Assembly: GCA_030390025.1 (NCBI GenBank)
Contig: CM059430.1
Span: 62,620,001 to 62,684,000 of the forward strand
Direction: 5' to 3'
Length of the DNA: 64,000 nt
From: Squalus acanthias
Taxonomy: Eukaryota
The notes under the pieces were generated by a model that saw nothing but the letters and a program-made list of their open reading frames with translations, was not told the DNA's origin and did no database searches. Shown here piece by piece: positions 8,901 to 46,900 of the stretch; within the stretch, counting starts at the first letter, position 1; the number at the start of each line of letters is the position of its first letter. Both the position numbers and the translations under genes were made by a program.

Positions 8901-10292
8901 TGTTTTGTTTCCATGTTAAAATGTTTATTCATTACCGTTATCTGGTTTTACTTCATCTGGACGATTACCTGAACCTACGGTCAAGTTGTCTGCTCTCGTG
9001 TTTCTCCCAATGCAGTTCCCCATCATGATCCGCTTTTTGGCGAGTTTGAATGAAGAGTTCTGAAATTAACCCTTTGACCAACTTCTAATCCTGGCAGAGC
9101 GGTCTGAAGTGGGCTCTGTCTCATACATTTAATTTAAACTGTGCTTACTGTCTGACTGCTGTGCAGCCAGTTACATAATTTAATTACGCACTGATAAACT
9201 CGGCAGACAATAATTAATAAACCATCTCCTTCACTATTCAGTGACAATCTTACTTCAATAAAGTACAGATATGTGAACTGGGGGTTTTAACCGATTTCTG
9301 CAAGTCGGCATTTTGTAGAGGGAACGGCGAAACAATTGTTGCCGAATTGCCTGGGATTACATTAGACAGTAAGTAAAGAACATAAGAAAAGTGACGAATA
9401 AGAACAAACCATTTGGTCGAGGGAAACATTCAGCTCGTATATTACCTCACCTACACCAATCCCTCTTCGCAGTTTATGCCATAATTGTCTCATTCATTTG
9501 ATGCGGAAGTCCCTCCCATTATTATATCTAAAACGAATAACAGTTTTTAATTAAAACATCCTTATTGCCGTTCAATACTACGGAGTTACTAAAACATCAA
9601 TAGTTCAAACAATGAACTCTGCTGAGGCCTCTTTTTAGGAAACACCCGTCACAATGTACAACTTAATATATTTACTCCTATTATTCTTGCAGTTAGTGTC
9701 GGTATGACCCCTTACGACTCGGGTTTTAGATATGCGGTGGATGGATTGGCGTTCCTGCTGCTCCTGATCATCATTGGGACGCACTGCCTATTGCAGATTA
9801 ATAAAGGTGAGGTCTATAGTAAGCATTTGATTTTCATACAATAATTCAGCGAGCAACGGGGGACGGGGGAGTGAGTGTTTCCGAGTAGCGCAGAGGAAGG
9901 AGAACTAAATTATGACTTAAAGTTGAAGGCAGTGCTATCTGATTTCAGGGAGCGCTGATTATTCCGAACAGCAACGGATTCAGCTCTTTAAAACTCAGAA
10001 ATACTCCCAGAATTTAAATTAAAAGTGTCTGATTATCTAGATATTTGCTACAGAAATTTCCACTTCGCAGCATGATGAATGGAACGTATGTTGAATAGGT
10101 GTGAGACTCCGGCCCGGACTGGTTGTACACCATTCCTGGTCTCTGCAGTGGGATTTCAAACACTGATAGCACAAAGTGAAATTGAAAATCATGTTCGGCA
10201 TTATACCGACTCTGGAAACTTCTTTGAAAACATTTATTACATTTCATTACTTCACAGGGAAAAATTGCTGCAAAGTGACCGAACTGGCGTGA
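5934..10292 (+). CDS. Gene A: non-rearranging VJ-C1-TM Ig-superfamily receptor with a short tail, ~274 aa. Exons 5934-5994, 6189-6509, 6951-7244, 9693-9806, 10258-10292
   Basis: Leader MLSSVMFLFLFLSLLGIIYT; V domain C...WW...DSGMYHC plus J-like GNGTGSHLTV; C1 domain LVC...FYP...WYKNG...YICLVSHASL; TM exon FRYAVDGLAFLLLLIIIG; tail GKNCCKVTELA*. All junctions are phase 1 with GT-AG, total 825 nt, open frame. The C1 donor and last exon are less certain. Confidence 0.8.
6189..6509 (+). CDS. Gene A exon 2, germline-joined VJ Ig domain
   Basis: ttttctaacag acceptor and G|GTAAGT donor; B-strand Cys, WW, DSGxYxC and GxGSxLxV G-strand all in one exon. Confidence 0.93.
6951..7244 (+). CDS. Gene A exon 3, C1-set Ig domain
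   Basis: ctctgttccgcag acceptor; C-x4-FYP, WYKNG, YEVSSS, YxCxVxHxSL; phase-1 donor ACAG|GTACGA (3' end ambiguous). Confidence 0.88.
9693..9806 (+). CDS. Gene A exon 4, TM exon with Arg and Asp
   Basis: ttattcttgcag acceptor, AAG|GTGAGG donor; VSVGMTPYDSGFRYAVDGLAFLLLLIIIGTHCLLQINK; 114 nt as in genes B and C. Confidence 0.85.
10258..10292 (+). CDS. Gene A exon 5, short cytoplasmic tail ending in an early stop
   Basis: atttcattacttcacag acceptor; GKNCCKVTELA-TGA; downstream donor CTG|GTACAT at 10299/10300; homologous to the gene B exon at 23356-23396. Confidence 0.6.
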
Positions 10293-10957
10293 GGAGCTGG
10301 TACATTTATTCATTCATCTCGCAAAAGGTTCAAATGTGAAGAAAGATTAATATCCTAATTACGTCAGAACTGTTTGTCCATTTACTAAAAGTATTTGTCC
10401 CGCTTAATGGGCCATTCAAATCGTATTCAGCGGAATATTTGTCGCCGGCGGGAAAGGATTTCACCCTCGAGGCGAAATTGCTGTTCGGAAAAAAATGCGA
10501 GCGCGGTGTAAAACCGGTTGCCGAATCGCTATCGCCTGTTTCGTGCTACCGACGAAGACCAATTTCAGCTGCGTCCCCGATGCGTTGCTGGTTTAAGTGA
10601 TTTTCTAGCAGACAAAAAAACGGTCAGCTTCGTCGAAAATGTACCTAAGTAATAACTGTTTATAGATTCAATATTGTTTGTAATTGGGCAACTCCGTGTT
10701 CTGGAACTACCGCTCGTTTAAACATTTCCGTGACACTGCAGTGTAAAACGAATATTGACAGGTTTAATTATGAGTTATAACGAACGCAGTACTCACCGGT
10801 CAAACATTCGCACTTGTTTCACTGCATTAATTATGCTTCCTGCCCTTTGTATCTAACCCATGTTGTTCTGTTCAATGTTTAAGCAGTAGTATGTAAGCTG
10901 GTGAAGGCAATGAACTAGCCACATTAGAAAATATATAATTATTTCTGGCCCATGCGG

Positions 10958-11360
10958 GAAGAAAAGGCTTAGATTGTTGATATGCTGCAGTAGGTTTGAG
11001 CAGAACTAAGTTAACTACAAGATGTAAACTTGAAGAGGAGAGTAATGTGTCCCATCAGCCGGGGCTGGGTAGCGGATCAGAAAGACACAGATCACCAGTG
11101 CAGCACCAACATTCATGCGATAACTGAGACTACAAGTTTGGGTGACTCGGATCGTGTAGTGTACCTCAAGCTGTCTGTGTGTTATTCTGATGATTGTTTT
11201 CGGCAGCAGTCCACAAAATTGGCAAAACGACCAATTTACAATATTTCCAAACACGGGCTTACCGACAAAACAAGGGACCTACGCGACTCTAGATTTGTCA
11301 GGCTCGAAAAAGCATGGACTCCAAAAATAAAAAAAACAGGGTAACATATTCCGGTGTTAT
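10958..11360 (+). pseudogene. Decayed ITIM-tail exons downstream of gene A (relics at 10958-11058 and from 11265)
   Basis: Aligns to gene B tail exons. Acceptor cag>cgg, in-frame TAG, 1-nt deletion, donor gt>cc; second acceptor cag>ccg; residual YAAV and TYATLDL. Confidence 0.7.
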
Positions 11361-13499
11361 ATTATTGAATGTGGGTGTAATAGTTTATTATTGTCTTACT
11401 TATTTGAGGAATTTTCATTTAATTACTTGTAAGAAAATCAAATTGCCTTTCATATTTTTGATCAATCTGTAGCATTTCACAGATGACAAATCCTTGTTTT
11501 GCTGTATCTAAATATCATCATACATAAATTCAATAAAAATATATTTTATATGACCTCTGTTATCAATCAACCAATCCTGATTTATTGAACTTTTGCGGGT
11601 AAAACTGTGAAGCTGAGTTTTGAATTGTGTGTTGCGTTACCGTGTTCTGACCTCCTGTGCAGGCGATTCTCCTGGTTTGGAAGGCAGGGCGCTCTAGTTT
11701 ATGGACTCTTCCATAAACCCACTGAGCACAGCTTGCAGATGAAGGCGTATAAGATGCTTTTCTTTAAATTCTGTATGGCTAGATCACTTGAATTACCGGG
11801 TTAGAACATTGTGTGGCAGCCGATCAATTCCAGTGACCAAGGATTTAGCTCCGAATGTAAAGATAATACAAGACGAAGTGAATCCGTTGCTTCTTGTTCT
11901 GCCGAACTCTTCTGGCTTGATGACTGTGTGCATTAACAAGCGTTTTACAGCAGAGAAACAACGTCTGTACTTTTCTCTCTCTCCACATGAACCACTCAGT
12001 TAGTTCCATTTACCATTTAGATTCACACAATCGTTAATATCCCTCTTTTTCTAGCAACTAATTAAATTCTAACAGAACTCTTGGGCTGTGATTCCACAAC
12101 GTTTTGTGGCAGAGAACGTCCACATCTCATGTTCTAACCAACCTCTGAGCAAAGAGTATTTTACCTCTCCCTTTATTTTTCCCGATTATGTTAAAGTTGT
12201 GTTCACTCGCCACCGTCTACTGGACAGTGAAAATAAACTATCACTGTTTCCTTGTCATAACGCCTTGTACTTTTGAAAACCTCTATCAAGTCACTCAACA
12301 AACTTTTGTGCTCCAGTTAAAGAAGTCCACTTTTCTCAATTAATAACTCTCCATTCTTGGTCAGTTCGGCGGCGCATTTTAATTTATTTTTTATTCTTCC
12401 ATAGTTCTACATAATCTCCTACACCAGTTGAACATAATCTCCTTGCTTCTGTAATCGATACCACCAAAATCTAAACCAAGACACACCCTTTATATTTTTA
12501 CTTTGTAATAAACTGCTGTTTCAACCAGTCATTGATGTCCATCTGCTCCTCTGCAGCTTTTAAAATCCTACAATTCAAGATGCATTTCCTGTTCCTAAGT
12601 GTACCTGCAAAAATATACCATTTCACATTTCCCTGCATTCTACATCAAACATTTATCTGCCCTACAAATTAACGATCGATGTCGTCTGCTGCATTTCACG
12701 ATCTGCGTCATAATTTCTTTCCCGATTCCCCATGAAGTGCCATCTGCACGTTTTAATGATGCACCCACAGTTCCCCAGTCAAGATAATTGATGTGTATAA
12801 TTTATAGAAGTAGCCGAACGCAGCGTCCTTGGAACATCACTCGCTACGTCTTAGCACGAGAAAAGTCCTTTTACACTTAAACTTTGTTTCCTCTCTTCCA
12901 ACTATCTCTCTAACCATGTGGCCACCTTGCCCTTACTTCCACGTGGCGTTATAGTATGTGGGACGGTATCCAATGCGTTTTGAAAATTTATATAAACTTC
13001 ATCTATTGCCTTTCCTTTGACTCTTTCGTATTTCTTCAGTGAAGCCTATAAGTCAAGCGCAATCTTCCCTTTTGAAATTCGGGCTGACTGGGATTGATTA
13101 GCTCAGGTTTCTGCAAGAGATTAGCAGTTTTATCCGGAATGACACAGAGCTTGCGAGATGTAAGTAAATGTGCAAATGTTTCCTTGCCGTTTTGTTGCCA
13201 TCTGTGTCACATTCTAATTGCTCATCTAATAAAAATGCATTGGCTTCGAGCTGGAGATTTAGTCAACGTGGAGTAGATTATTTTGATAATTATGTAAACT
13301 AAAGTAACACATTCACGTACAGCAGTCAAAACATGAACATTTGGGCGTTCTATCAGTCCCGGGTTCTGATAAGATGTAAGGTATCAACGAAGGCATTGAC
13401 CAGTCTGCTTTCAGCTGCACGAGACGTTGTGCTAAATATTGACAAGAGTGTATCGATTTCTCTAGCTAAGTAAACAACACGACTGAGTAGCTCAGCTCT

Positions 13500-13855
13500 C
13501 CATGGCAAGTATATCCATCCTTAGGTAAGGAGAGCAAAGCTATACACAATACTCCAGGTGTGGTCTCACCAGGGTCCTATATAATTGCAGTAAGACGTCT
13601 TTACTCTTATACTCAAATCCTCTTGTAATAAAGGCCAACATACCATTTGCTTTTCTAAATGCTGGCTGTACCTGCATGTTAACTTTCAGTAATTTGTGTA
13701 CACGGACACCCAGGTCCCTCTGAACACCAACATTTCCAAATCTCTCACCATTTAAAACATACTCTGCTTTTCTATTTTTGCTACCAACGTGGATAACTTC
13801 ACATTTCTCCAAGTTATATTTCATTTGCCATGTTCTTGCCCACTTCTTAGCCTGG
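13500..13855 (-). mobile_element. CR1 fragment truncated at the inversion breakpoint
   Basis: KYNLEKCEVIH...LVRPHLEYCV; the right-arm counterpart extends further (39790-40760). Confidence 0.85.
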
Positions 13856-15713: not shown

Positions 15714-15887
15714 CTAATTGATTTTTCCTTCTGTGTACAAAGGCTCTGTAACTCCTCTTTGTTTTTTTGTCTGCAACTGGGCATACTCTGTGCTTCTTTC
15801 GTTATGTTTGCATTTCCCCGTTTTCTCTGAGTTAGTCAATGCTAGAGTCGTGTATGTCAGCTTGCCACGGCCTGTCCCATTTTCGGT
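15714..15887 (-). CDS. Terminal cytoplasmic exon, distal copy, with ITIM LTYTTL and ITSM-like TEYAQL
   Basis: Phase-0 acceptor ggctttacag; TENGTGRGKLTYTTLALTNSEKTGKCKHNERSTEYAQLQTKKQRGVTEPLYTEGKIN*. Confidence 0.8.
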   Translation of the reverse strand, partial: TENGTGRGKLTYTTLALTNSEKTGKCKHNERSTEYAQLQTKKQRGVTEPLYTEGKIN

Positions 15888-16094
15888 CTGTAAAGCCAAT
15901 GTTTGGGAATATTGTTAATTGGCCTTTTTGCAAGTTCAGTGGACTGCTGCTCAAAGCAGATATCAGAAGTACGCACAAATAGCCTCAATACATCACACGG
16001 TTAAATTCAGCACAAACATATTCCTTCTGCTATCGCATTAATGTTGATCTTACACTGGTGATCTATGTTTCTCTGATCTGTCACTTAGCCCTAC

Positions 16095-16196
16095 CTGATC
16101 GTACACGGTTCCCTGCTCTTCATGTTTACGTCTTGGAGTTTTCTTGGCTTTGCTCATTTCGAATGCAACATAATGCAGGATCTCAGCCGCTGCTCC
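16095..16196 (-). CDS. Cytoplasmic exon, distal copy (LHYVAF, TVYDQ)
   Basis: 102 nt, open, cag acceptor and GTAGGG donor; paralogous to 19299-19400. Confidence 0.72.
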
Positions 16197-16361
16197 CTGC
16201 ATGGGTCACAAAGAAAATGTTTGGTTATGTCGTCAGTTCATTGTTTTCACCAGTTTACGTACCGCTGATCAAACATTCAACAGATTGACCGGGGCTGGAG
16301 TTCAAGTGCACAAACGATAGTTCATATATATATAGGTAAGTGGGAATATTAAGGCACTGTG

Positions 16362-18662: not shown

Positions 18663-18920
18663 AGTTTATCATCAGTTAAATAATAGATTTAACATTAAGC
18701 ATGTCAGGAAGGGTACTTTTTCTTAAAAGCAGCTAAAAGAAAATTCATCAAATAATTGAACAGTAAGTAACGACTATAGACTGCATTCTCTGATATATCA
18801 CTGGAATGGGTTACCTCTCGGAGGAATGGTATCGCACGGTAAACATACGCGTGGAGTTGATATGGTAGCAGAATTCGATCAAAACACAACAAAAAGTGAC
18901 TTCTGCAGCAAACTTTATTG

Positions 18921-19093
18921 CTAATTGATTCTTACTTCTGTGTAGACAGCCTCTGTTACTTTTCTTTGTTATTTTGTCTGCAGCTGGCCATACTCTGCGC
19001 TTCTTTCATTATTTTTGCATTTCCCCGTTTTCTCTGAGCCAGTCAATGCTAGAGTCGCGTATGTCAGCTTGTCACGGGCTGTCCCTTTTCGGT
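18921..19093 (-). pseudogene. Terminal cytoplasmic exon, proximal copy (frameshifted): LTYATL, AEYGQL, AVYTEV
   Basis: ggctttacag acceptor; 1-nt deletion and AAA>TAA relative to the 15.8-kb copy; AATAAA directly after the TAG (18914-18919). Confidence 0.75.
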
Positions 19094-19298
19094 CTGTAAA
19101 GCCAATGTTTGAGAATATTGTTACTTGGCCTTTTTGCAAATTAGTGGACTGCTGCTCAAAGCAGACATCAGAAGGACGCATAAATAGCCTCAATACAACA
19201 CACGGTTAACTTCAGCACAAACATATTCCTTCTGCTATCGTATGAATGTTGATATACACCAATGATCTATGTTTCTCTGATCTGTTACTCATTCTTAC

Positions 19299-19400
19299 CT
19301 GAGCGTACGCGGTTCTCACCTCTTCACGTTTAGGTCTTGGAGTTTTCCTGGCTCTGCTCAAATCTAATGCAGCATAATGCACGGTCTCAGCCGCTGCTCC
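19299..19400 (-). CDS. Cytoplasmic exon with ITIM VHYAAL, proximal copy
   Basis: ttcctttctgtcccatgcag acceptor, CAG|GTAAGA donor, 102 nt, phase 0-0: GAAAETVHYAALDLSRARKTPRPKREEVRTAYAQ. Confidence 0.8.
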
Positions 19401-19745: not shown

Positions 19746-22330
19746 ATGGAGAGGGGAGCAGAAAGGATCAAACCAGGAGGAGGAGAGCGGATCGAGTGGG
19801 TAGGAGGTGCGATCAAAGAGGAGAGGAGAGTGGATCGAAGCGGGGAGAGCAGCTATTAAAAATAGGAGCTCGGAGAAAGAAGCTCGCAGGGGAAGAGGAG
19901 CTAGGAGAGAGATAAGCTCGGAGAGGGGAGAGGGGAGAGAGGAGTCCGGAGTGGGGAGGGAGGAGCTCAGAGAGGGAGAGAAGATCAGGAACTCAGTAAA
20001 ATAATGGGACTCAAGGCAGATAAATCCCCTGGACCTGATGGCTTACATCCTAGGGTCTTCAGGGAAGTGGCAGTGGGGATTGTGGATGCTTGGGTAATAA
20101 TTTTCCAAAATTCACTGGACTCGGCAAAGGTCCCGGCAGATTGGAAAACTGCTTCTAATGTAACACCCTTATTTAAAAAGGGTAGTAGGCAGAAGGCTGG
20201 AAATTATAGACCAGTTAGCCTAACAGCTGTGGTGGGTAAAATTTTGGAGTCTATTATTAGGGAGATAGTAACGGAACATTTAGATAAACATAATTTAATA
20301 GGACAAAGTCAGCATGGCTTTATGAAGGGGAAGTCATGTCTGACAAATTTGCTTGAGTTCTTTGAGGACATAACGTACAGGGTGGATAAAGGGGAACCAA
20401 TGGACGTAGTGTATTTAGACTTCCAGAAGGCATTCGACAAGGTGCCACATAAAAGATTATTGCTCAAGATAAAAAATCACTGGATTGGGGATAATATTCT
20501 GGCATGGCTGGAGGATTGGTTATCTAACAGGAAGCAGAGAGTTGGGATAAATGGTTCATTCTCGGACTGGCAACCAGTAGCCAGTGGTGTTCCGCAGGGG
20601 TCGGTGCTGGGTCCCCAACTCTTTACAATCTATATTAACGATTTGGAGGAGGGGACCGAGTGTAACATATCAAAGTTTGCAGATGATACAAAGATGGGAG
20701 GGAAAGTAGAAAGTGAGGAGGACATAAAAAACCTACAAGGGGATATAGACAGGCTGGGTGAGTGGGCGGAGATTTGGCAGATGCAATACAATATTGAAAA
20801 ATGTGAGGTTATGCACGTTGGCAGGAAAATTCAGAGAGCAAGTTATTATCTTAATAGCGAGAAACTGGAAAGTACTGCAGTAAAAAGGGATCTGGGGGTC
20901 CTAGTGCAAGAAAATCAAAAAGTTAGTATGCAGGTGCAGCAGGTGATCAAGAAGGCCAACGGAATGTTGGCTTTTATTGCTAGGGGGATAGATTATAAAA
21001 ACAGGGAGTTATTGCTGCAGTTATATAAGGTATTGGTGAGACCGCACCTGGAATACTGCATACAGTTTTGGTGTCCATACTTAAGAAAAGACATACTTGC
21101 TCTCGAGGTAGTACAAAGAAGGTTCACTCGATTAATCCCGGGGATGAGGGGGTGGACATATGAGGAGAGGTTGAGTAGATTGGGACTCTACTCATTGGGG
21201 TTCAGAAGAATGAGAGGCGATCTTATTGAAACATATAAGATTGTGAAGGGGCTTGATCAGGTGGATGCGGTAAGGATGTTCCCAAGGATGGGTGAAACTA
21301 GAACTAGGGGGCAAAATCTTAGAATAAGGGGATGCTCTTTCAAAACTGAGATGAGGAGAAACTTCTTCACTCAGAGGGTAGTAGGTCTGTGGAATTTGCT
21401 GCCCCAGGAAGCTGTGGAAGCTACATCATTAAATAAATTTAAAACAGAAATAGACAGTTTCCTAGAAGTAAAGCGAATTTGGGGTTACGGGGAGCGGGCC
21501 GGAAATTGGACATGAGGCCGAGTTCGGATCGGACAAGGCCCTGTGGGTGGCGGAGCGGGCCCAGGGGCTGAGTGGCCGGGTCCTGCTCCTACTTCTTGTG
21601 TTCTTTAGATTTGAGGTTAGGATCAGATCAGCCATGATCTTATTGAATGGCGGAGCAGGCTCGAGGGGCCGATTGGCCTACTCCTGCTCCTATTTCTTAT
21701 GTTCTTATGTAACTCGTAGGGAGAATATCAGGGACTTGCGGGTGGGGGCGGGGTGGAGGGTAATGTCATCAACTCGGGGAGAGAAAGTCAGGAGCTTGTT
21801 GGGTGGGGCACGGTGAGAAAGATGGGGAGGTGGGAGGAACGTGTCCAGGTCTAAAGCAGGGGGTTGAGAGCAAGAAAGTGATCCAGATAGGAAGATGCAG
21901 GTGCACATGCGCACTCGATCGAGACGCGCATGTGCAGTAACAAATGGTGCGGCGGCTGCGGCCTGCACAAGCACACTTTCGTCAGCTGCGTGCGGAGGTC
22001 AGGGGAATGTGGAGAGAGAGGAGAGTGGATTGTAGGTGAGAGAAGAGGAGGGGAGTTAAAGTGGGCAGCAGAGTGGATCCAAGGGGGCAGGGAGGAGAGG
22101 GGATCGAAGTGGGGGAGACGAGCTCGGAGAGAAAGGAGCTCGGAGAGAGAGGATATCAGAGAGAGGAGAGAGGAACCCGGAGAGGGAGAAGAAGGCCAGG
22201 AACTCGGAGAAAGGTCAGGAACTTCTTGGGGGGTAGTACAGTGAGAACAGAGGAGAGGAGGGAAGAATGTGATCCAGGTCTAAAGGGGGGGAATGTGAGC
22301 AAGAACCTGATCCAGATGGGAGGGTAGATC
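19746..22330 (+). repeat. Purine-rich (GA/GGAGA) low-complexity tract split by the young CR1
   Basis: Strong G+A bias at 19746-19995 and 21712-22330 with recurring gagctcggagag-like units. Confidence 0.6.
19996..21710 (+). mobile_element. Young 5'-truncated CR1 LINE with an uninterrupted 503-aa RT ORF (20004-21515)
   Basis: KSPGPDGLHP, NYRPVSL, YLDFQKAFDKVPH, GVPQGSVLGP, KFADD; 3' UTR ending (TTCTTATG)n. Confidence 0.96.
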
Positions 22331-24064
22331 ACGTTCTCCCGCCCTCTGTTCGGACTGGACTACGCTCTTCCACCACACTTCCTTCACACCTGCTCAACGT
22401 TCGCCCTCTCCTTCCCCACCAACACCACCCAGACCGCAGCAGTTCAAGAAGGCAGCTCAATACCACCCTCTCAAAGGCAAATAAGGATGGGCAAAAAATA
22501 AATTAATGTTAAATATGAGAGCCTATTCTGTGTTGGTCCTATAACCTGAATAATATTACATTTATGTTTTATTTCCCGGACTTGACTATTCCAATGTTCT
22601 CCTGGCCAGCTCCCATCTTCCACCGTCAGTGAACTTGAGCTCATCCAAAACTCTGCTGCACTTATCCTAACATGCAGCAAGTCTCATTCACCCACTACCC
22701 CTGTGGTCGTTGACCTAAATTAGCTCATGGTCCACCAATAATGTTCCCGCTAAGCTACACGGTCAGCAGCTGCCAGGAGGTCCCATGCAGGCTGCTTACC
22801 GGTGTTTGAATGGGAGATTTGGTGCAAGCAAGAAATTTTGAATGGGCTGTGCAGCCCGTTAAAGGGATCGTGCACCCCTCAAAAATTAGGGGGAACATTG
22901 TAAACCAACAGAATGATTTTAAAATTCTCATCTCCATGTTAAAATCCCTCCATGGCCTCACACCTTCCTTTCTGAACTCTGCATTGTGAGCGCTGTGAGT
23001 GCTCCTAACCCGAGAGGGTGAGCCCTGTCTGTTTTCTGAAAGTACTAGTGTTCGCACTGTGAGTTCTGGAGCCTGGCTGTCACAATGAATGGATCATATT
23101 ACTCATTGCAAAGATCTTGATTACTCTCCAGCAGGCATGGTCAAATTACACATTCCAGACAAACTGTTGAGTGTGTCTTGTCCTCCAAGGGGACCGATCA
23201 GAAATCTGATCTTGTCCTCGAAGGGGACCAATCAGAAATTTCGTGTTGCAACCAGACACGACCGTAGACTTAAGCTATTCTGACGTGATTATGATATAAT
23301 CTTTCCATTATAGCAACCTTGACATTTCAACCATCTACCAGGATGAATGAATGAACTCTTCACGGCGGTTCGGTCTCGTTACACATTCTTCTTTACCTGA
23401 AAACGAATGAAATTGAATGATATTGAAAGATTGAAATATTTACTCAGTTTCCGTGTCAATGATTGAAAAGACATTTCTCGAGTCAGAACAATGCATAAAC
23501 TAATTTCCAATTCCGCATTGTGCCGATAGTGTTTGAAATCCAAGCCCTTGTAGCGATCAGCAATGGTGCATTTTTTGGATTTTTTTTCGAAAACTGAGGG
23601 AATCGTTTTGGACACTAAGGGAATCAAGGGATATGGGAATAGGGTGGGAAAGTGGTGTTGAGGCTCGAGGGGTCGTATAGCCTACTCCTGGTCCTATTTC
23701 TTATGTTCAGATGTGTACAACCATTCCCCGGCCAGAGCCTCACACTCTTTCACTCAAACTAGTTGTGCATCCACAACAGAATGTGTGGGAAAGTGATTGT
23801 GTGTCAGGGTACATGTCATTTATTATGCTGCAAAGGGGGCATTTTTGTTGCAAACATCCAGATAATTATCTCCATTTTTATTACGATTCTCTGAGAATGT
23901 CTGCGTTTTAAAAATGCATTTGGTACAATCGGCGCTCTCTGAAAACAGCTCACACGGTTTTCAACTTTAATTCCGAATCGAGTTCTCATTTCCCCGTGTT
24001 ACCCGGAGACTGTCACTACCCGTGGGGTTTTAAACTAAAATGAAGTGCTTACATTAGATCTTAC

Positions 24065-24178
24065 CGTCATTATTCTGCAGTCGGCACCGCGTCCCAATGA
24101 AGATCATTAGCACTAGAAACGCCAATCCACCCACCGCACACGCAGAAGCCCAGAAGTAAAGTGAATTATCGACAATAC
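24065..24178 (-). CDS. Gene B TM exon, uncharged
   Basis: GIVDNSLYFWASACAVGGLAFLVLMIFIGTRCRLQNND; 114 nt; AG/GTAAGA boundaries. Confidence 0.85.
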
Positions 24179-25353: not shown

Positions 25354-25665
25354 CTTGGTTAAGTTTAGAAACAGTAAGGGTGACAAGAGCTGAAGTCTCG
25401 AGAGAGACATGAGAAACCAAACAGTTATAACGGGCGTCGCTCGGGACAGGCTGTGTCTCAACCAAAGAGCTGGAAACTTCAAACAGTCCCTCCGTGTTCT
25501 GCACTTTCCTGGTATGTATTCCTAATGCAGTTTCGATGCCATTTTTATACCAAGTGAGGGTGAAATTCTCCGGACAAAACGCAGCCGTTTCACACACAAA
25601 AGACAGAGAAGCAGGCGAATTCCCTTCAGGTGTCCTGGAGACAATCTTCAGTGGGGTTGGGGCCG
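25354..25665 (-). CDS. Gene B C1 exon (open)
   Basis: APTPLKIVS...FVCETAAFCPENFTLTWYKNG...YNCLVSHVSL...NQ; ttccgcag acceptor, CAAG|GTATGA donor. Confidence 0.88.
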
Positions 25666-27355: not shown

Positions 27356-27654
27356 CAATTACTATTAGATGTGATCCGGTTCCATTTCCTCGAACTATTC
27401 CCCGATGGAACACTGCACAGTGATAGACTCCAGAATCTCGGAAAGTCGCGCTCAGCAACTGAAAGAACCCTCTCGCTTTCTGTTATCGGCGCTTGTGCGC
27501 AGGTATTCATTTTCACCCTGTTTTCACCAATACACTCTTACCTTGGAATTGTCCGGCGAGATGGGGAATAAGCAGTATAAGGTGATGTTCCCCCCTCTGG
27601 ATACAGTCGCTTGTTTTGGCACTTGAGTCACTCGGAACGTGTTGTTGTCCGCTG
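27356..27654 (-). pseudogene. Gene B VJ exon (disrupted)
   Basis: VTQVPKQATVSRGGNITLYCLFP...VYW*KQGENEYL...[frameshift]GFFQLLSATFRDSGVYHCAVFHRGIVRGNGTGSHLIV. Confidence 0.88.
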
Positions 27655-28149
27655 CTGTCAGAAAATATAGTCAAGTACAGGTTAATTGTATTAGAGATGA
27701 CCTGGGGATAGAAGACAGAAAAAACCTAGATAGAGATATTGCGGTTCACTAAATGAATGCGGAAACTACTTCGGATATGTAAATTAAAGTAGCTGGGACA
27801 ATGAATAAAGAATTGCCTGTGTAAAAAATCTGGCGGAGATTCAGGCAAAGGAAAAGCAAAGCCGCCGACATTCGGAGCAACTGATGACTCTCTGCATTAA
27901 CTGCGAGTTTGCAACTGTTAAAAAAGGTTTGCGGTTTATTTTCAATTAGATATGCCGCAATGACATTTGACATCATGTAACTGAGGGTTCAGAAATTTGC
28001 CTTCGTTTGTGAAGTGGGATTTTCTAACTTCTGCACTTAATTCGACTGCTCGAATCACATGTGTCACAGACAGCAATGAGTAAGGTAACATTTTTGATTT
28101 TCAAATGCAAAACTTACTAACACACGCGGAGTCAGTGTTGTTTCTTGAC

Positions 28150-35059: not shown

Positions 35060-35367
35060 ATTTTTGTTTTAATACGTTCTTAGCAATTCATCATTGGTGC
35101 TGTTTCTACCCTCCTTCTGCACAATTGGTTTGGGCGTACACATATCAGTTATCATTTGTTCATTTTTAATGATATTAACCTAACTTAAACACATCAGGTG
35201 TAAGTGTTATAAAACGGCATTATCTCCGAGATAGCTTGTTGGCATTCTCCTACCAGAATGGTGTGGTTTTAAATTCCCAGATTTCATAAAATCGACAGGG
35301 TTAGACTCCTGGAATTGATCAACTCTTTCGTGTTTCAGTCCGTGATGGTCCACGTAGTCCAAATATT

Positions 35368-36108: not shown

Positions 36109-36629
36109 ATTGAGTATGTGGATGAACAATGTTGTCACACGAGGAAAGGTGGTAAAAAGGGCCATGGTGCAACTCACCATCAACGTTGAAAAGAATCATA
36201 AAATCATTGAAATTTATGGCACAGAAGGAGGCTATTCGGCCCATCGTGTCTGCGCCGGTCGAAAAAGAGCCATCCAGGCGCATCCCACTTCCCAGCTCTT
36301 GATCCATAGCCTTGCAAGTTACGGCACTTCAATGCATATCCAAGTACAATTTAATTGTGATTAGGGTTTCTGCCTCTCCAACCCTTTCAGGTAGTGTGCT
36401 CCAGACCCCCAACGCCCTCTCGGTAAAAAAAGATCTCCTCAACTCCCCTGTAATCCTTCTATCAATTACTTTAAACCTGTGCCCTTTGGTTATTGCCTTC
36501 TCTGCTAATTGATATACGCGCTTCCTATCCACTCCAACTAAGTTCCTTATAATTTTATATACCTCAATTATGTCTCCCCTCAGCATAATCTGTTCCAAAA
36601 AAACAACCTCAGCTTATCCAATTTTTCCT

Positions 36630-39789: not shown

Positions 39790-40760
39790 GTAAATAGAAC
39801 GGTTCCCGTGGATTGAAAACTGGCAAAGGTAACCGCACTATTTAAGAAAGGAGGGAGATAGAAAAAGGGAATGACAGACCAGTTAGCCTGACATCGGTAG
39901 TAGGGAAAATGCTATAATCTATTATTAAGGATGCTTAGAAAATAATAAAAGGATTGGGCAGAGTCAATGTGGATTTATGAAAGGGAAATCGTGTTTGACA
40001 AATCTTTTAGAGTTTTTTGCGGTTGTAACTAGGAGAATAGATAAGGGGGAACCAGTGGTTGTGGTGTATTTGGATTTTCAGAAGGCATTCGATAAGGTTC
40101 AACACAACATGTTATTGAACAAACAAGGAGCTCATGGGATTGGGGGTAATATACTAGCATGGATTGAGGATTGGTTAAGCAACAGAAAACAGAGAGTAGG
40201 GATAAACGGGTCATTTTCGTGTTGGCAGGCTGTAACTCGTGAGGTACCGCAATGATCAGTGCTTGGGCCTCAGCTATTCACAATCTACATCAATGATTTG
40301 GATGAGGGGACCAAATGTAATATATCCAAATTTTCTGATGATACAAAGCTGGGTGGGAATGTAAGTTGTGAGGAGGATGCAAGCAGGCTTCAAGGGGACA
40401 TAGACAGGCTAAGTGAGTGGGCAAGAACATGGCAAATGAAATATAACGTGGAGAAATGTGAAGTTATCCACGTTGGTAGCAAAAATAGAAAAGCAGAGTA
40501 TTTTTTAAATGTTGAGAGATTTGGAAATGTTGGTGTTCAGAGGGACCTGGGTGTCCGTGTACACAAACTACTGAAAGTTAACATGCAGGTACAGCAAGCA
40601 TTTAGAAAAGCAAATGGTATGTTGACCTTTATTACAAGAGGATTTGAGTATAAGAGTAAAGACGTCTTACTGCAATTATATAGGACCCTGGTGAGACCAC
40701 ACCTGGAGTATTATGTATAGTTTTGGTCTCCTTACCTAAGGATGGATATACTTGCCATGG
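39790..40760 (+). mobile_element. CR1 RT fragment
   Basis: KGKSCLTNLLEFF, YLDFQKAFDKV, KFSDD, LVRPHLEY. Confidence 0.9.
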
Positions 40761-42889
40761 AGAGCTGAGCTACTCAGTCGTGTTGTTTACTTAGCTAGAG
40801 AAATCGATACACTCTTGTCAATATTTAGCACAACGTCTCGTGCAGCTAAAAGCAGACTGATCAATGCCTCCGTTGATACCTTACATCTTATCAGAACCCG
40901 GGACTGATAGAACGCCCAAATGTTCATGTTTTGACTGCTGTACGTGAATGTGTTACTTTAGTTTACATAATTATCAAAATTATCTACTCCACGTTGACTA
41001 AATCTCCAGCTCGAAGCCAATGCATTTTTATAAAATGAGCAATTAGAATGTGACATAGATTGCAACATAACGGCATGGAAACATTTGCACATTTACTTAC
41101 ATCTCGCAAGCCCTGTGTCATTCCGGATAAAACTGTTAATCTCTTGCAGAAACCTGAGCTAATCAATCCCAGTCAGCCCGAATTTCAAAAGGGAAGATCG
41201 CGCTTGACTTATAGGCTTCACTGAAGAAATGCCAAAGAGTAAACGGAAAGGCAATAGATGAAGTTTATATAAATTTTCAAAACGCATTTGATACCGTCCC
41301 ACATACTATAACGCCACGTGGAAGTAAGGGCAAGGTGGCCACATGGTTAGAGAGATAGTTGGAAGAGAGGAAATATAGTTTAAGGGTAAAAGGACGTTTC
41401 TCGTGCAAAGACGTAGCGAGTGATGTTCCACCGACGCTGCGTTCGGCTACTTCTATATATTATACACATCAATTATCTTGACTGGGGAACTGTGGGTGCA
41501 TCATTAAAACGTGCAGATGACACTTCATGAGGAATCAGGAAAGAAATTATGACGCAGATCGTGAAATGCAGCAGACAACATCGATCGTTAATTTGAAGGG
41601 CAGATACATGCTTGATGTAGAATGCAGGGAAATGTGAAATAGTATATTTTTGCAGGTACATTTAGGAACAGGAAATGCATCTTGAATGGTAGCAGAGGAG
41701 CAGATGGACCTCAATGACTGATTGAAACAGAAGTTTATTACGAAGTAAAAATACAAAGGGAGTGTCTTGGTTTGGATTTTGGTGGCATCGATTACAGAAG
41801 CAAGGAGTTAATGTTCAACTGGTGTAAGAGCGTATGTAGAACTGTGGAAGAATAAAAAATAAATTAAAATGCGCCGCCGAACTGACCAAGAATGGAGAGT
41901 TATTAATTGAGAAACGTGGACTTCTTTAACTGGAGCTCAAAAGTTTGTTGAGTGACTTGATAGAGGTTTTCAAAAGTACAAGGCGTTATGACAAGAAAAC
42001 AGTGATAGTTTATTTTCACTGTCCAGTAGACGGTGGCGAGTGAGCACAACTTTAACATAATCGGGAAAAATAAAGGGAGAGGTAAAATACTCTTTGCTCA
42101 GAGGTTGGTTAGAACATGAGATGTGGACGTTCTCTGCCACAAAACGTTGTGGAATCACAGCCCAACAGTTCTGTTAGAATTGAATTAGTTGCTAGAAAAA
42201 GAGGGATATTAACGATTGTGTGAATCTAAATGGTAAATGGAACTAACTGAGTGGTTCATGTGGAGAGAGAAAAAAGTACAGACGTTGTTTCTCTGCTGTA
42301 AAACGCTTGTTAATGCACACAGTCATCAAGCCAGAAGAGTTAGGCAGTACAAGAAGCAACGGACTCACTTCGTCTTGTATTATCTTTACATTCGGAGCTA
42401 AACCCTTGGTCACCGCAATTGATCGGCTGCCACACAATGTTCTAACCCGGCAATTCAAGTGATTTAGCCATACAAAATTTATAGAAAAACATCTTATACG
42501 CCTTCAACTGCAAGCTGTGCTCAGTGGGTTTATGGAAGAGTCCATAAACTAGAGCGCCCTGCCTTCCAAACCAGGAGAATCGCCTGCACAGGGGGTCAGA
42601 ACACGGTAACGCAACACACAAGTCAAAACTCAGGCTTCACAGTTTTACCCGCAAAATTTCAATCAATCAGGAATGGTTGATTGATAACAGAGGTCATATA
42701 AAATGCATTTTTATTGTATTTATGTATGATGATATTTAGATACAGCGAAACATGGATTTGTCATCTGTGAAATGCTACAGATTGATCAAAAATATGAAAG
42801 GCAATTTGATTTTCTTACAAGTAATTGAATGAAAATTCCTCAAATATTTAATACAATAACAAACTATTACACCCACATTAAATGATATA

Positions 42890-43282
42890 ACACTAGAATA
42901 TGTTACCCTGTTTTTTTTATTTTTGGAGTCCCCTGCTTTTTCGAGCCTGAGTCGCGTAGGTCCCCTGTTTTATCTGTAAACCCGTGTTCGGAAATATTGT
43001 AAATTGGTCGTTTTGCCAATTTTGTGGACTGCTGCCGAAAACAATCATCAGAATAACACACAGACAGCTTGAGGTACACTACACGACCCGAGTCACCCAA
43101 CCCCTTGTAGTCTCAGTTATCGCATGAATGTTGGTGCTGCACTGGTGATCTGTGTCTTTCTGATCCGCTACCCAGCCCCGGCTGATGGAACACAGTCCTC
43201 TCCTCTTCAAGTTTACATCTTGTAGTTAACTTAGTTCTGCTCAAACCTACTGCAGCATATCAACAATCTAAGCCTTTTCTTC
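42890..43282 (-). pseudogene. Decayed ITIM-tail exons downstream of gene C
   Basis: Inverted counterpart of 10958-11360 with the same lesions in the first relic, plus a ~10-nt deletion in the TYATL exon. Confidence 0.65.
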
Positions 43283-43924
43283 CCGCATGGGCCAGAAATA
43301 ATTATATATTTTCTAATGTGTTACATACTACTGGTTAAACATTGAACAGAACAACATGGGTTAGATACAAAGGGCAGGAAGCATAATTAATGCAGTGATA
43401 CAAGTGCGAATGTTTGACCGGTGAGTAATGTGGTCCTTATAACTAATAATTAAACCTGTCAATATTCGTTTTACACTGCAGTGTTACGGAAATGTTTAAA
43501 CGAGCGGTAGTTCCAGAACACGGAGTTGCCCAATTACAAACAATATTGAATCTATAAACAGTTATTACTTAGGTACATTTTCGACGAAGCTGACCGTTTT
43601 TTTGTCTGCTAGAAAATCACTTAAACCAGCAACGCATCGGGGACGCAGCTGAAATTGGTCTTCGTCGGGAGCACGAAACAGGCGATAGCGATTCGGAAAC
43701 CGGTTTTACACCGCGCTCGCATTTTTTTCCGAAAAGCAATTTCGCCCCGAGGGTGAAATCCTTTCCCGCCGGCGACAAATATTTCGCTGAATACGATTTG
43801 AATGACCCATTAAGCGGGACAAATACTTTTAGTAAATGGACAAACAGTTCTGACGTAATTGGGATATTAATCTTTCTTCATATTTGAACCTTTTGCGAGA
43901 TGAATGAATAAATCTACCAGCTCC

Positions 43925-46900
43925 TCACGCCAGTTCGGTCCCTTTGCAGCAATGTTTCCCTGTGAAGTAATGAAATGTAATAAATGTTTTCAAAGATTTT
44001 TCTTGAGTCGGTATAATGCCGAACATGATTTTCAATTTCACTTTGTGCTATCAGTGTTTGAAATCCCACTGCAGCGACCAGGAATGGTGTACAACCAGAC
44101 CGGGCTGGAGTCTCACACCTATTCAACATACGTTCCATTCATCATGCTGCGAAGTGGAAATTTCTGTCGCAAATATCTAGATAATCAGACACTTTTAATT
44201 TAAATTCTGGGAGTATTTCTGAGTTTTAAAGAGCTGAATCCGTTGCTGTTTGGAACAATCAGCGCTCCCTGAAACCAGATAGCACTGCCTTCAATTTTAA
44301 GTCATAATTTAGTTCTCCTTCCTCTGCGCTACTCGGAAACATTCACTCCCCCGTCCCCCGCAGCTCGCTGAAGTATTGTATGAAAATCAAATGCTTACTA
44401 TAGATCTTACCTTTATTAATCTGCAATAGGCAGTGCGTCCCAATGATGATCAGGAGCAGCAGGAACGCTAATCCATCCACCGCATATCTAAAACCCGAGT
44501 AGTAAGGGGTCATACCGACGCTAACTGCAAGAATAATAGGAGCAAATATATTAAGTTGTACATTGTGACGGGTGTTTCCTAAAAAGAGGCCTCAGCAGAG
44601 TTCATTGGTTGAACTATTGATGTTTTAGTAACTCCGTAGTATAGAAAGGCAATAAGGATGTTTTAATTAAAAACTGTTATTCGTTTTAGATATAATATTG
44701 AGAGGGACTTCTGCATCAAATGAATGAGACAATTATAGCATAAACTGCGAAGAGGGATTGGTGTAGGTGAGGTAATATACGAGCTGAATGTTTCCATCGA
44801 CCGAATGGTTTGTTCTTATCCGTCACTTTTCTTATGTTCTTTACTTACTGTCTGATGTAATCCCAGGCAATTCGGTAACAAATGTTTCGCCGTTCCCTCT
44901 ACAAAATGCCGAATTGCAAAAATCGGTTAAAACCCCCAGTTCACATATCTGTACTTTATTGAATTAAGAATGTCACTGAATAGTGAAGGAGATGGTTTAT
45001 TAATTATTGTCTGCCGAGTTTATCAGTGCGTAATAAAATGATATAACTGGCTGCACAGCAGTCAGACAGTAAGCACAGTTTAAATTAAATGTATGAGACA
45101 GATCCCACTTCAGACCGCAGTGACAGGATTAGAAGTTGGTCAAACGGTTAATTTCAGAACTCTTCATTCAAAATCGCCAAAAAGCGGATCATGATGGGGA
45201 ACTGCATTGGGAGAAACCCGAGAGCAGACAACTTGACCGTACGTCCAGGTAATCGTCCAGATGAAGTAAAACTAGATAACGGTAATGAATAAACATTTTA
45301 ACATGGAAACAAAACAAAGAGTAACAATCAGCAAAATATGAAATATAATCGGATAACAAAGATAAGCCTCATGTTTATATGTGTTATGTATCAAATACAG
45401 GAACTTGGAGGCTCACTAATGTTATACTGAGAATGTTTGTAAGGCAGACGATATACCCGGTTTTACAACACATTGGGTTCCTCTAATCATTCAAACATGG
45501 ATTGTATGTGTTTGTTTATATTCCCATGAGTTGTCCGTGTACTCCAGCAACCATACAAAAAGGTTTCCTTAATTTCAGTTCTTTATGAAAAGATTTCCAA
45601 ATTCTTTCGATTCAGGTGTCCACGGCACCGACTTACATCCCTCAGAAAGCCCCACTCCTTCCTATGCAGCAGTACAACCTCTTACTCGCCATGCGCAAAG
45701 CCATGGGAAATAAGCTTATATATGGATTTCCAATGGTGGTGTGCACAGTACGTTTGAGCATAGGCTATTCTATAACAAGAAGGTGACTCCGGGGTTTATA
45801 ATATCATCGGTCTCCTGTTGTTGCTCTTCTTGCAATTGTATCTTTGCTTCTTTCCCACTTGAGAATTACTTTTGTGCTGCCCTCTCTATCTTTGCCTTAC
45901 ACCTTCTTCTTTCTTATTTTTTCTATTTGTATGTTTGTCACATACTTTATTCATTGTGGTGTCTGTAAAGGTCTATCTAAAGGTCTGTGCAGCACCCTTT
46001 TGGATTTTGGTCTGTTTCACTCCTAATGAATGGAATCTCTGTTATTTCTCTCCTTAGGTAGTTCCAAATGTTGTGCATTGGCTCCCACACAAGTTCCATT
46101 TTTAATATACTCAACATCTATCTCTAATCTTTGTTTACTGTATTAGTGATGTGGGAAGATGGAAGGCAACATGTACTAGGTGAAAGAGGCTTTTGGAGAG
46201 GTGATGCAAGATGGAGAGTTGAGAGAGTAAGTGGGATGGGGAGACTGTGTGGCTGGAAGGGGTGTAGACAGAGCTGTGGCCAGGACGAAACAATAAAATA
46301 GATTTCAATCAGGCAAGTTGGAGGGTAAGGTAGCCTTGAACAGTATAGAATAAGGTACGACCTAGGATCAATCATGTTGTCCTGTGTGGGAGTCTTGGGA
46401 TTTGGAAACATGATGGAATTTTAGTGTGTGTTCTAGGTTGCTCGGCTTATCCAGCACTTTGGGGTAGAAGGCCATTGCTGAAAAATAAGAGCTGGGAATA
46501 CAGGAAATGGGTTTGTGTTTGCGAGTAAATTACAGTGTAAAAACCCTTACAGTCAATCGCCCATCGGAGGTCGGACTCAGGAGCCCCACTAGGAGTCCCT
46601 CGAAACCAGACAAACGAACTGCCGCTCCTGGTCCTGCAACTCATGTAAGGAACCAGATAAAGGGAAACAAATGAGTTTTGAGCAGTCAGCAAGAAATGAT
46701 AATAATTGGATAGAAGAGGTACATCGCCTGCTCATATTTGTTTAACAGTTGGAAGCTGATGAAGTTTAACAGGCAGTTACTGGGTGGAGGACGATAATAA
46801 TCATTCGGTATTACTATGGCTCCGTGTCAATAAGATTTTACATTGAAACACTAATTTTCTCTTTGCTTTGCTGTTTTCTGGGCGCTTTCCAAACTAACTT

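What the first reader, a model, noticed from the sequence alone, without database searches (positions are those of the whole stretch)
9693..44524. Paired-receptor system with an apparent inhibitory-to-activating (or decoy) conversion
Seen: gene B has an uncharged TM and downstream ITIM/ITSM exons. Genes A and C keep leader, V, C1 and TM exons open, but stop after about 11 residues of the next exon (2-nt shorter than gene B's frame requires). They have charged TM residues and multiply disabled ITIM exons. Known: SIRPa/SIRPb, KIR-L/KIR-S, LILR and Siglec pairs follow this pattern. Inference: the ancestor was inhibitory and A/C are derived activating or decoy forms with selection retained on the ectodomain.
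Basis: partly seen in the sequence, partly recalled or inferred. Interest (0 to 1): 0.85.

Follow-up and report, generated by a model that had tools for sequence, protein, structure and literature searches.

The report
Shark SIRP-like receptors that lost ITIM tails
Two mirror-image copies of a shark immune-receptor gene have lost their inhibitory tail and gained charged membrane residues, and they flank a dead inhibitory-type relative; this is a known way of making activating receptors, seen here in an early-branching vertebrate.

Summary
9693 and 44524 are the first bases of the TM exons of genes A (+) and C (-). A and C are the arms of an inverted duplication of at least 13.9 kb, about 95.5% identical. 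Both keep open leader, V-set, C1-set and TM exons. Their 42-nt juxtamembrane exon is 2 nt shorter than B's 44 nt, so it stops after G+10 residues. Their TM exon carries Arg and Asp. Both downstream ITIM/ITSM exons are wrecked: splice sites lost, stops, frameshift, Tyr replaced.

- Gene B, the "inhibitory partner", is itself a pseudogene. Its V exon has a TGA stop, a 22-nt deletion and a lost donor, and the donor of its juxtamembrane exon is gone.
- B belongs to a different ectodomain lineage from A/C.
- C's first donor is GC, not GT.

Relics and selection tests support descent of A/C from an ITIM-bearing ancestor, with constraint kept on the ectodomain. "Activating" versus "decoy" is unresolved, and expression of A/C is not shown.

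The family is annotated in public shark genomes as SIRP-alpha-like/SIRP-beta-like. Unchecked scan notes report the same kind of conversion at four other places in this genome. This is a new member of a known kind, of moderate interest.

The parts
5934..5994 (+). Gene A leader exon (MLSSVMFLFLFLSLLGIIYT, then a split codon); donor GT
   Evidence: The homologous donor at 5994/5995 is used in an RNA contig of a paralog (joint 5994>6201 with 12 letters between).
6189..6509 (+). Gene A V(J) exon, open. It has Cys/Trp/Cys and a J-like GNGTGSHLTV motif.
   Evidence: Pfam V-set E=2e-10. 71% identity to Heterodontus P0001, E=1.8e-41. Splice sites.
6951..7244 (+). Gene A C1-set exon, open
   Evidence: Pfam C1-set E=1.9e-10
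9693..9806 (+). Gene A TM exon (SVGMTPYDSGFRYAVDGLAFLLLLIIIGTHCLLQINK) with Arg and Asp
   Evidence: 74% identity to the TM stretch of catshark P0004.
10258..10299 (+). Gene A juxtamembrane cytoplasmic exon, 42 nt (2 nt short). TGA stop at 10290-10292 after G+KNCCKVTELA.
10962..11065 (+). Gene A relic of ITIM/ITSM exon a: acceptor and donor lost, 2 stops, 1-nt deletion, second Tyr changed to Ser
11253..11331 (+). Gene A relic of terminal ITIM exon b: acceptor lost, 18-nt deletion, early TAA. AATAAA at 11326.
   Evidence: One RNA(?) contig 98% alike covers 11194-11393.
48243..48303 (-). Gene C leader exon; donor is GC, not GT
47725..48045 (-). Gene C V(J) exon, open
46990..47283 (-). Gene C C1-set exon, open
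44411..44524 (-). Gene C TM exon, same Arg and Asp as A
43918..43959 (-). Gene C juxtamembrane exon, 42 nt, stop after G+KHCCKGTELA
43175..43278 (-). Gene C relic exon a, with the same lesions as A; second Tyr changed to Phe
42907..42997 (-). Gene C relic exon b, with a further 14-nt deletion
27817..27871 (-). Gene B leader exon (MSAALLFLCLNLRQIFYT), donor GC
27356..27654 (-). Gene B V pseudo-exon: TGG>TGA at 27526-27524, 22-nt deletion at 27475/27474, donor GT lost
25354..25665 (-). Gene B C1-set exon, open
24065..24178 (-). Gene B TM exon, uncharged core, RCR stop-transfer
23353..23396 (-). Gene B juxtamembrane exon (G+KEECVTRPNRREE..). No GT donor at the phase-0 end; 8 nt are missing relative to A.
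19299..19400 (-). Gene B exon a1 (VHYAAL ITIM; TAYAQ)
19064..19093 (-). Gene B exon b1 read from its acceptor (TEKGQPVTS-stop); 1 nt shorter than b2
   Evidence: The same ending is seen in Heptranchias P0163.
16095..16196 (-). Gene B exon a2 (LHYVAF; TVYDQ), a tandem duplicate of a1
15714..15887 (-). Gene B exon b2 (LTYTTL, TEYAQL, PLYTEG, stop)
4..13854 (.). Left arm of the inverted duplication (gene A)
40405..53910 (.). Right arm of the inverted duplication (gene C)

Best explanation
The window holds three members of the cartilaginous-fish family of non-rearranging V(J)-C1-TM receptors, which public annotation calls SIRP-alpha-like or SIRP-beta-like.

Gene B is a dead copy of the inhibitory type.

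Genes A and C are inverted duplicates of one short-tailed derivative. Before that duplication, three things happened to an ITIM-bearing ancestor:
- It lost 2 nt in the 44-nt juxtamembrane exon, which creates a stop 11 codons in.
- Its two ITIM/ITSM exons then decayed.
- Its TM exon acquired an Arg and an Asp and lost the RCR stop-transfer.

The Arg is shared with a catshark protein. It also sits at the same position as in short-tailed members from Mustelus and Scyliorhinus.

Shown by sequence: the product is a type I glycoprotein with a V(J)-C1 ectodomain and a tyrosine-free tail of about 19 residues, so it cannot recruit SHP phosphatases.

Inferred: the outer-leaflet Arg couples it to an ITAM adaptor of the FcR-gamma/DAP12 kind, making it the activating-type counterpart of ITIM-bearing relatives elsewhere in the cluster. 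Gene A is the intact copy. Gene C may be weakened by its GC first donor.
For: - Exon maps and lesions.
- The lesions in the juxtamembrane exon and in relic exon a are identical in A and C, so they predate the duplication.
- Intact homologs give the ancestral layout: TM, then a 14-residue exon, then exon a, then exon b (P0164, P0165, P0173).
- Selection, A vs B: dN/dS is 0.40 in V and 0.48 in C1, against 1.22 in TM and 1.4-2.3 in relic a.
- Selection, A vs C: coding exons differ at 19 of 790 positions and introns at 163 of 3528 (p=0.004). pN is below the intron rate (p=0.003). There are no stops or indels, although 1.45 and 1.79 are expected at the intron rate.
- Arg at the same position, 1-3 residues before the (C/Y)xxGG core, occurs in P0004, P0027, P0028, P0056, P0161 and P0162. 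All six lack an ITIM.
- Among the 59 of 76 family members with a TM, a basic residue at the outer TM goes with no ITIM: 14 of 21 against 12 of 38 (p=0.014).
- Within each ectodomain group of the trees, both tail kinds occur.
Against: - No transcript specific to A or C was seen. The three small runs listed (RNA by guess) gave contigs only 93-96% like A. These continue after C1 into an exon that is not in the window.
- dN/dS for A vs C is 0.55, not significantly below 1 (p=0.28).
- C has a GC first donor.
- Hydropathy shifts the best TM window 7 residues towards the C-terminus in A/C. That leaves Asp at position 2 of the window and Arg outside it, so these may be interface residues rather than buried charges.
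- An acidic residue next to the Arg is not typical of adaptor-coupled receptors (recalled, not tested).
- Shark adaptors were neither searched for nor shown.
- No DNA of other sharks could be fetched, so the age of the 2-nt deletion is unknown.
Confidence: 0.6

Rival explanations
1. A/C encode a signalling-null decoy or ligand sink. Arg and Asp, four residues apart on one helix face, would neutralise each other. The lengthened hydrophobic stretch (HCLLQI in place of RCRLQN) would anchor the protein without any adaptor. The receptor would then bind ligand but transmit nothing.
For: - The R-x-x-x-D spacing and the loss of RCR.
- The tail is tyrosine-free.
- Asp is not seen in the one close TM relative, P0004, which has Gly there.
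- A search with the P0004 TM region returned only P0004 itself (1 of 21 candidates).
Against: Arg sits at the same position as in six short-tailed members from other species. This points to a conserved role for the Arg, not just tolerated drift. No structural or expression data exist.
Confidence: 0.18
2. A and C are silent or recently dead genes. The open ectodomain exons would only reflect the short time since the duplication, or gene conversion from an expressed paralog.
For: - No A/C-specific RNA contig covers the TM or 42-nt exon.
- RNA contigs 93-96% like A's leader, V and C1 come from paralogs with a different next exon. A donor for conversion therefore exists.
- C has a GC donor.
- A vs C dN/dS is 0.55, not significant.
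- 12 of 19 coding differences change the protein.
Against: - pN is below the intron divergence (p=0.003).
- There are no stops or indels where about 3.2 are expected. The Poisson chance of none is about 0.04 (my arithmetic).
- All 9 splice sites of A are canonical.
- One contig 98% like A lies on 11194-11393, beside the first AATAAA after the stop.
Confidence: 0.17
3. A/C are still inhibitory, because their TM exon splices to a distant intact ITIM exon.
For: None found. The 42-nt exon keeps a GT donor.
Against: - The stop lies inside the 42-nt exon, upstream of that donor.
- tblastn with 11 homologs finds tail exons only at the B units and the A/C relics.
- The next gene parts on A's strand are absent from the window.
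Confidence: 0.03
4. The inverted duplicate is an assembly artefact, such as a mis-joined haplotype, so only one short-tailed gene exists.
For: The two arms are strictly collinear over at least 13.9 kb.
Against: The arms differ by 4.5%, with about 18 indel events. The spacer between them is unique and 26.5 kb long. There is no N in the window.
Confidence: 0.02

Closest known systems
Mammalian SIRP-alpha / SIRP-beta1 pair
   Same: - An N-terminal V-set domain with a J-like motif, followed by C1-set and TM.
- The long-tail form has several YxxL/V motifs (B: VHYAAL, LTYTTL, TEYAQL).
- The short-tail form has a basic TM residue.
- NCBI names the shark homologs SIRP-beta-1-like and PTPNS1-like.
   Different: - There is one C1 exon here, not two.
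- The TM has Arg plus Asp, not Lys.
- The V domain does not hit SIRP among its 13 PDB matches.
- The C1 domain hits IgA, UrIg2 and MHC II beta ahead of SIRP-gamma.
- Orthology, CD47 binding and DAP12 pairing were not tested.
KIR and Ly49 activating forms derived from inhibitory ones (recalled: Abi-Rached and Parham 2005; not read here)
   Same: The tail is truncated by a frameshift or stop, ITIM-coding relics remain downstream, a charged TM residue is gained, and the event recurs within a fast-evolving cluster.
   Different: The domain types differ (V+C1 here), as does the lineage (cartilaginous fish). The partner gene in the window is dead and belongs to another ectodomain lineage.
Annotated cartilaginous-fish 'SIRP-like' V-C1 proteins (P0001/P0160 Heterodontus, P0161 Mustelus, P0162 and P0004 Scyliorhinus, P0163-P0164-P0173 Heptranchias)
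   Same: - A/C V is 71% identical to P0001 and groups with P0001, P0161 and P0162.
- B C1 is 78% identical to P0165.
- The A/C TM motif VGM..Y.SGFRY.V.GLAFLLLLII is shared with P0004.
   Different: - No database protein combines the A/C ectodomain type with the GFRY TM.
- None has the Asp.
- The truncation points of the short-tailed members differ.
UrIg / UrIg2 (PMC12227049: abstract and matched passages read)
   Same: A non-rearranging VJ plus C1 gene of elasmobranchs. The A C1 domain matches the UrIg2 structure 9dmx at E=3.3e-10.
   Different: - UrIg2 has further C domains.
- The terms ITIM, ITSM and SIRP occur 0 times in that paper.
- The genes here have a single C1, a TM, and either ITIM tails or truncated tails.
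Teleost NITRs and chicken PRARP genes (recalled; PRARP seen only as a reference-list entry in PMC10751288)
   Same: Non-rearranging V(J) receptors that come in ITIM-bearing and charged-TM forms.
   Different: As recalled, NITRs lack a C1-set domain. No comparison was run here.

Membership tests
Cartilaginous-fish non-rearranging V(J)-C1 'SIRP-like' family | V-set exon with a J-like motif, closely related to annotated members | tested here: met
   - phmmer: 266 proteins at E<=1e-3. The best is Heterodontus P0001, 71% identity, E=1.8e-41.
- Pfam V-set E=2e-10.
- Tree placement with P0001, P0161 and P0162.
Cartilaginous-fish non-rearranging V(J)-C1 'SIRP-like' family | Exon order: single C1-set exon, then TM exon, then a 14-residue exon, then ITIM exons | tested here: met
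   Pfam C1-set for A, B and C. The exon order matches P0164, P0165 and P0173.
SIRP family (SIRP-alpha/beta/gamma) | V-C1-C1 ectodomain (three Ig domains) | tested here: not met
   The window has only three C1-like exons, one per gene. The homologs also have one.
SIRP family (SIRP-alpha/beta/gamma) | Specific sequence affinity to SIRP domains | tested here: inconclusive
   - V domain: SIRP is not among the 13 PDB matches at E<=1e-3.
- C1 domain: SIRP-gamma scores E=3.5e-8, below IgA (1.3e-13), UrIg2 and MHC II beta.
- The SIRP names are automatic annotation.
SIRP family (SIRP-alpha/beta/gamma) | Lys in the TM pairing with DAP12 (beta form); SHP-1/2 binding by the tail (alpha form); CD47 as ligand; synteny | not testable with these tools
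   A/C have Arg and Asp, not Lys. Binding, ligand and synteny need experiments or a chromosome-scale view.
Paired immune receptors (functional class) | An intact inhibitory member with ITIMs next to a short-tailed member that has a near-identical ectodomain | tested here: not met
   B is broken in its V exon and at the donor of its juxtamembrane exon. B is only 60-67% (V) and 62% (C1) identical to A. At family level, both tail kinds occur within each ectodomain group.
Paired immune receptors (functional class) | Short-tailed member with a basic TM residue and no tyrosine motif | tested here: met
   Position caveat.
Paired immune receptors (functional class) | Association with an ITAM adaptor | not testable with these tools
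   No adaptor sequence or assay was available.
UrIg / UrIg2 | VJ-C1 followed by further C domains, with no ITIM tail (as read in PMC12227049: abstract and passages) | tested here: not met
   A single C1 exon is followed directly by the TM exon. ITIM exons are present in B.

The most novel reading that the evidence does not exclude
The Arg and Asp at the outer end of the A/C membrane helix may not be a docking site for a classical ITAM adaptor. They could instead be a complementary charge pair. One possibility is that they neutralise each other, giving an adaptor-free decoy. Another is that they drive pairing between V(J)-C1 chains, much as TCR chains assemble with CD3. The second case would make this shark family a living model of how antigen-receptor-like dimers assembled in the membrane before RAG.
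Probability: 0.08. Interest if true: 0.7.

Novelty: new member of a known kind. Interest (0 to 1): 0.4.

Why it matters
The findings suggest that cartilaginous fish already use the birth-and-death route that makes activating or tail-less receptors out of inhibitory ones in mammals (KIR, Ly49, SIRP). The window shows the steps in one place:
- a 2-nt deletion that truncates the tail;
- decayed ITIM exons that have lost their splice sites;
- a remodelled TM;
- a dead inhibitory relative next door.

It also gives concrete constructs for testing whether shark ITAM adaptors pair with an outer-leaflet Arg, and what a neighbouring Asp does to that pairing.

The pattern itself is textbook, and the family is already annotated in public shark genomes. 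The value is therefore comparative, not conceptual.

Tried and rejected
- **A false "next exon".** I first took 9949-10022 (A) and its counterpart in B as the exon after the TM. Its phase does not fit exon a, and no homolog contains it. The true 42/44-nt exon was found by local alignment with intact homologs. Either reading leaves A/C without an ITIM.
- **UrIg as the family.** Rejected after reading the abstract, outline and matched passages of PMC12227049: ITIM, ITSM and SIRP occur 0 times, and the domain plan differs.
- **Literature on this shark family as paired receptors.** Seven searches, plus passages of PMC10751288, found no description. This holds for that library only. The supplements of those papers were not opened and could list such genes. 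PMC10530332 is not held.
- **Dating the 2-nt deletion from other sharks' DNA.** The other DNA collections hold no shark genomes, so this was dropped.
- **More proteins with the GFRY TM.** A search on P0004 residues 225-287 returned only P0004.
- **Expression.** One run search listed 3 runs of the species, RNA only by guess, holding 0.00-0.01 of the sampled words. Laying them on 5900-11400 gave 8 contig records, none on the TM or 42-nt exon.
- **Spliced model.** Exons were searched one by one, and dN/dS counts were summed per exon without concatenation.

Full report
**Layout**

The window has no N. It is built around an inverted duplication:
- 3537-13854 matches 50699-40405 at 95.5% over 10,349 columns.
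- 4-1631 matches 53910-52286 at 93.4%.
- A unique spacer of about 26.5 kb lies between the arms.

tblastn with the window's own Ig exons finds exactly three V-like and three C1-like exons. These define gene A (+, left arm), gene C (-, right arm) and gene B (-, spacer). The finding's limits, 9693 and 44524, are the first bases of the TM exons of A and C.

**Genes A and C**

The exons of A are:
- leader, 5934-5994
- V, 6189-6509
- C1, 6951-7244
- TM, 9693-9806
- a 42-nt exon, 10258-10299

C mirrors them. All are open and phase-1 compatible. Every splice site is AG/GT except C's first donor, which is GC.

Pfam calls V-set (E=2e-10 for A, 5.5e-11 for C) and C1-set (about 2e-10).

The TM exon reads SVGMTPYDSGFRYAVDGLAFLLLLIIIGTHCLLQINK in A. 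C has one change, D>Y at residue 8.

The 42-nt exon is 2 nt shorter than B's 44-nt exon, and the missing bases lie before the shared CCGAAC.

**Relic tail exons of A and C**

Downstream lie the two tail exons in the ancestral order.

Relic a has these lesions:
- acceptor CAG>CGG
- a TAG stop
- a 1-nt deletion
- a TGA just before the ITIM Tyr
- the second Tyr changed to Ser (A) or Phe (C)
- donor GT>CC

Relic b has an 18-nt deletion and an early TAA. A has also lost its acceptor, and C has a further 14-nt deletion.

The lesions of relic a are shared by A and C, so they are older than the duplication.

The first AATAAA after the stop lies inside relic b, at 11326 in A and 42921 in C.

**Gene B**

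B does have an uncharged TM (..FWASACAVGGLAFLVLMIFIGT, then RCR). It also has open tail exons arranged as a tandemly duplicated unit about 3.2 kb long:
- a1: VHYAAL; TAYAQ
- b1
- a2: LHYVAF; TVYDQ
- b2: LTYTTL, TEYAQL, PLYTEG

But B is not an intact gene:
- Its V exon has TGG>TGA at 27526-27524, a 22-nt deletion, and no GT at the phase-1 donor.
- Its 44-nt exon is followed by ATTCAT, not GT. Eight nt are missing relative to A. The next GT is out of phase.
- Its leader donor is GC.

A LINE reverse-transcriptase ORF (20004-21515, +) sits in its long intron.

So the window contains no working inhibitory partner.

**Family context**

A phmmer search with A's V exon against 1.84 billion representatives gave 266 proteins at E<=1e-3. 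The top hits are cartilaginous-fish proteins that NCBI names "signal-regulatory protein beta-1-like" or [quoted passage not shown]. They come from Heterodontus, Scyliorhinus, Mustelus, Callorhinchus, Pristis and Heptranchias.

Intact long-tailed members (P0164, P0165, P0173, P0160) show the layout: TM, then a 14-residue exon, then exon a, then exon b.

Trees of the V and C1 domains (27 and 31 rows; the groups have 87-89% support, which is not decisive) give two placements:
- A/C group with Heterodontus P0001/P0160, Mustelus P0161, Scyliorhinus P0162 and batoid proteins.
- B groups with Heterodontus P0165/P0166, Mustelus P0008 and Scyliorhinus P0004.

Each group contains both ITIM-tailed and short-tailed members. 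Conversions, or exchanges of the signalling half, have therefore happened more than once.

The A/C TM motif is shared only with catshark P0004, which has a B-type ectodomain. This points to a mosaic origin.

Unchecked scan notes report similar "conversion" cases 10.7 kb, 374 kb and 703 kb upstream and 10 Mb downstream in the same genome. They also report many VJ-C1-TM-ITIM genes elsewhere.

**Selection**

*A vs B*

| Region | dN/dS | Note |
|---|---|---|
| V | 0.40 | p=0.0008 |
| C1 | 0.48 | p=0.01 |
| TM | 1.22 | |
| relic a | 2.25 (A), 1.43 (C) | two stops |
| relic b | 1.29 | |

*A vs C*
- Coding exons differ at 19 of 790 positions and the four introns at 163 of 3528 (p=0.004).
- There are 12 nonsynonymous and 7 synonymous differences: dN/dS 0.55, p=0.28.
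- pN is below the intron rate (p=0.003).
- At the intron rate, 1.45 stop-creating changes and 1.79 indels would be expected in the exons. None is seen.
- One splice-site hit (C's GC donor) is seen, where 0.74 is expected.

In sum, the ectodomain was under constraint over the long term. The evidence for the period since the duplication is only modest.

**The charged residues**

Arg lies 1-3 residues before the (C/Y)xxGG core. It sits at the same position in P0004, P0027, P0028, P0056, P0161 and P0162, none of which has an ITIM.

Of 76 family members examined, 17 had no TM. Among the other 59, a basic residue at the outer TM goes with no ITIM: 14 of 21 against 12 of 38 (p=0.014; a crude classifier).

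The Asp (Gly in B and in P0004) was seen only in A and C here. A scan note reports the same Arg+Asp in a gene 12.5 kb upstream (unchecked).

Hydropathy places the best 21-residue window at VDGLAF...CLLQI in A/C. That is 7 residues further C-terminal than in B, because RCR has become HCL. The charges may therefore sit at the outer interface.

**Expression**

The one run search listed three small runs of the species, labelled RNA by guess, holding 0.00-0.01 of the sampled words. Laid on 5900-11400, they gave eight contig records.

- Spliced contigs join the leader to V at A's predicted donor (5994) and join V to C1. This confirms that the exon borders are used in this family.
- These contigs are only 93-96% like A.
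- After C1 (7242) they continue into sequence that is absent from the stretch. That sequence has no VTN[SC]-type match anywhere in the window, so they come from paralogs elsewhere.
- No contig covers A's TM or 42-nt exon.
- One 201-nt contig is 98% like 11194-11393 and lacks C's deletion. This is compatible with a long unspliced 3' UTR of A, but it could also come from a paralog.

Expression of A/C is therefore open.

**Reading**

Shown:
- A/C are tail-truncated derivatives of an ITIM-bearing V(J)-C1 receptor, duplicated after the truncation.
- B is a dead inhibitory-type gene of another ectodomain lineage.

Inferred:
- The A product is an adaptor-coupled, activating-type receptor that uses its outer Arg.

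Rivals: a signalling-null decoy (Arg-Asp pair), silent or dying genes, and, unlikely, distant splicing or an assembly artefact.

**Comparison and novelty**

It works like the SIRP-alpha/beta and KIR-L/KIR-S pairs. Membership of the SIRP family proper fails on the V-C1-C1 criterion and is not backed by specific sequence affinity.

The mechanism is well known in mammals (recalled). The gene family is already annotated in shark genomes, but I found no paper describing it in seven searches.

It is a new member of a known kind, with an unusual Arg+Asp TM as its one odd feature.

**Limits**
- No DNA from other sharks.
- Supplements of the papers were not opened.
- Neighbouring genes lie outside the window.

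Noticed in passing
window 48241-48242 (C), 27815-27816 (B) vs 5995-5996 (A): The first-intron donor is GC in both C and B but GT in A. This is either two independent T>C hits or a tolerated GC donor in this family.
   Followed up: partly
window 19299-19400 vs 16095-16196: The two copies of B's exon a differ by 15 nonsynonymous and 0 synonymous changes (Fisher p=0.02). The flanking DNA is about 86% identical.
   Followed up: partly
window 19064-19093: Read from its acceptor, B's exon b1 ends TEKGQPVTS-stop because it is 1 nt shorter than b2. Heptranchias protein P0163 ends ..KGQPVTS too, so this short ending may be an old variant of the tail, not a lesion.
   Followed up: partly
window 7242 (end of A's C1 exon); runs X1-X3: RNA(?) contigs 93-96% like A's C1 exon continue into a different next exon that is not present in the window. 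An expressed close paralog with another membrane-proximal exon therefore exists elsewhere. Run X2 shows a second continuation.
   Followed up: partly
window 13505-13854 and 40259-40720: The inner ends of the inverted arms fall inside LINE reverse-transcriptase fragments. The C-side fragment continues past the arm end (39977-40255).
   Followed up: no
window 20004-21515 (+): A 503-aa open reverse-transcriptase ORF of a LINE lies in B's intron between the juxtamembrane exon and exon a1, antisense to B. Related fragments lie at 59610-61159 and 54939-55496.
   Followed up: no
window 61610-63998: This stretch is 81-90% like 11427-12819, the DNA downstream of A's relics, in C's orientation. It is probably the 3' flank of a further family member lying beyond the right end of the window.
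   Followed up: no
window 9949-10022 (A), about 23883-23936 (B): This stretch has a conserved AG acceptor and an open frame between the TM and juxtamembrane exons. It is absent from all homolog proteins, so it is probably not an exon.
   Followed up: yes
window 10014-10339 and 43904-44203: ORFs of 86-99 aa on both strands overlap the juxtamembrane exon region of A and C. They were not examined and are probably chance.
   Followed up: no
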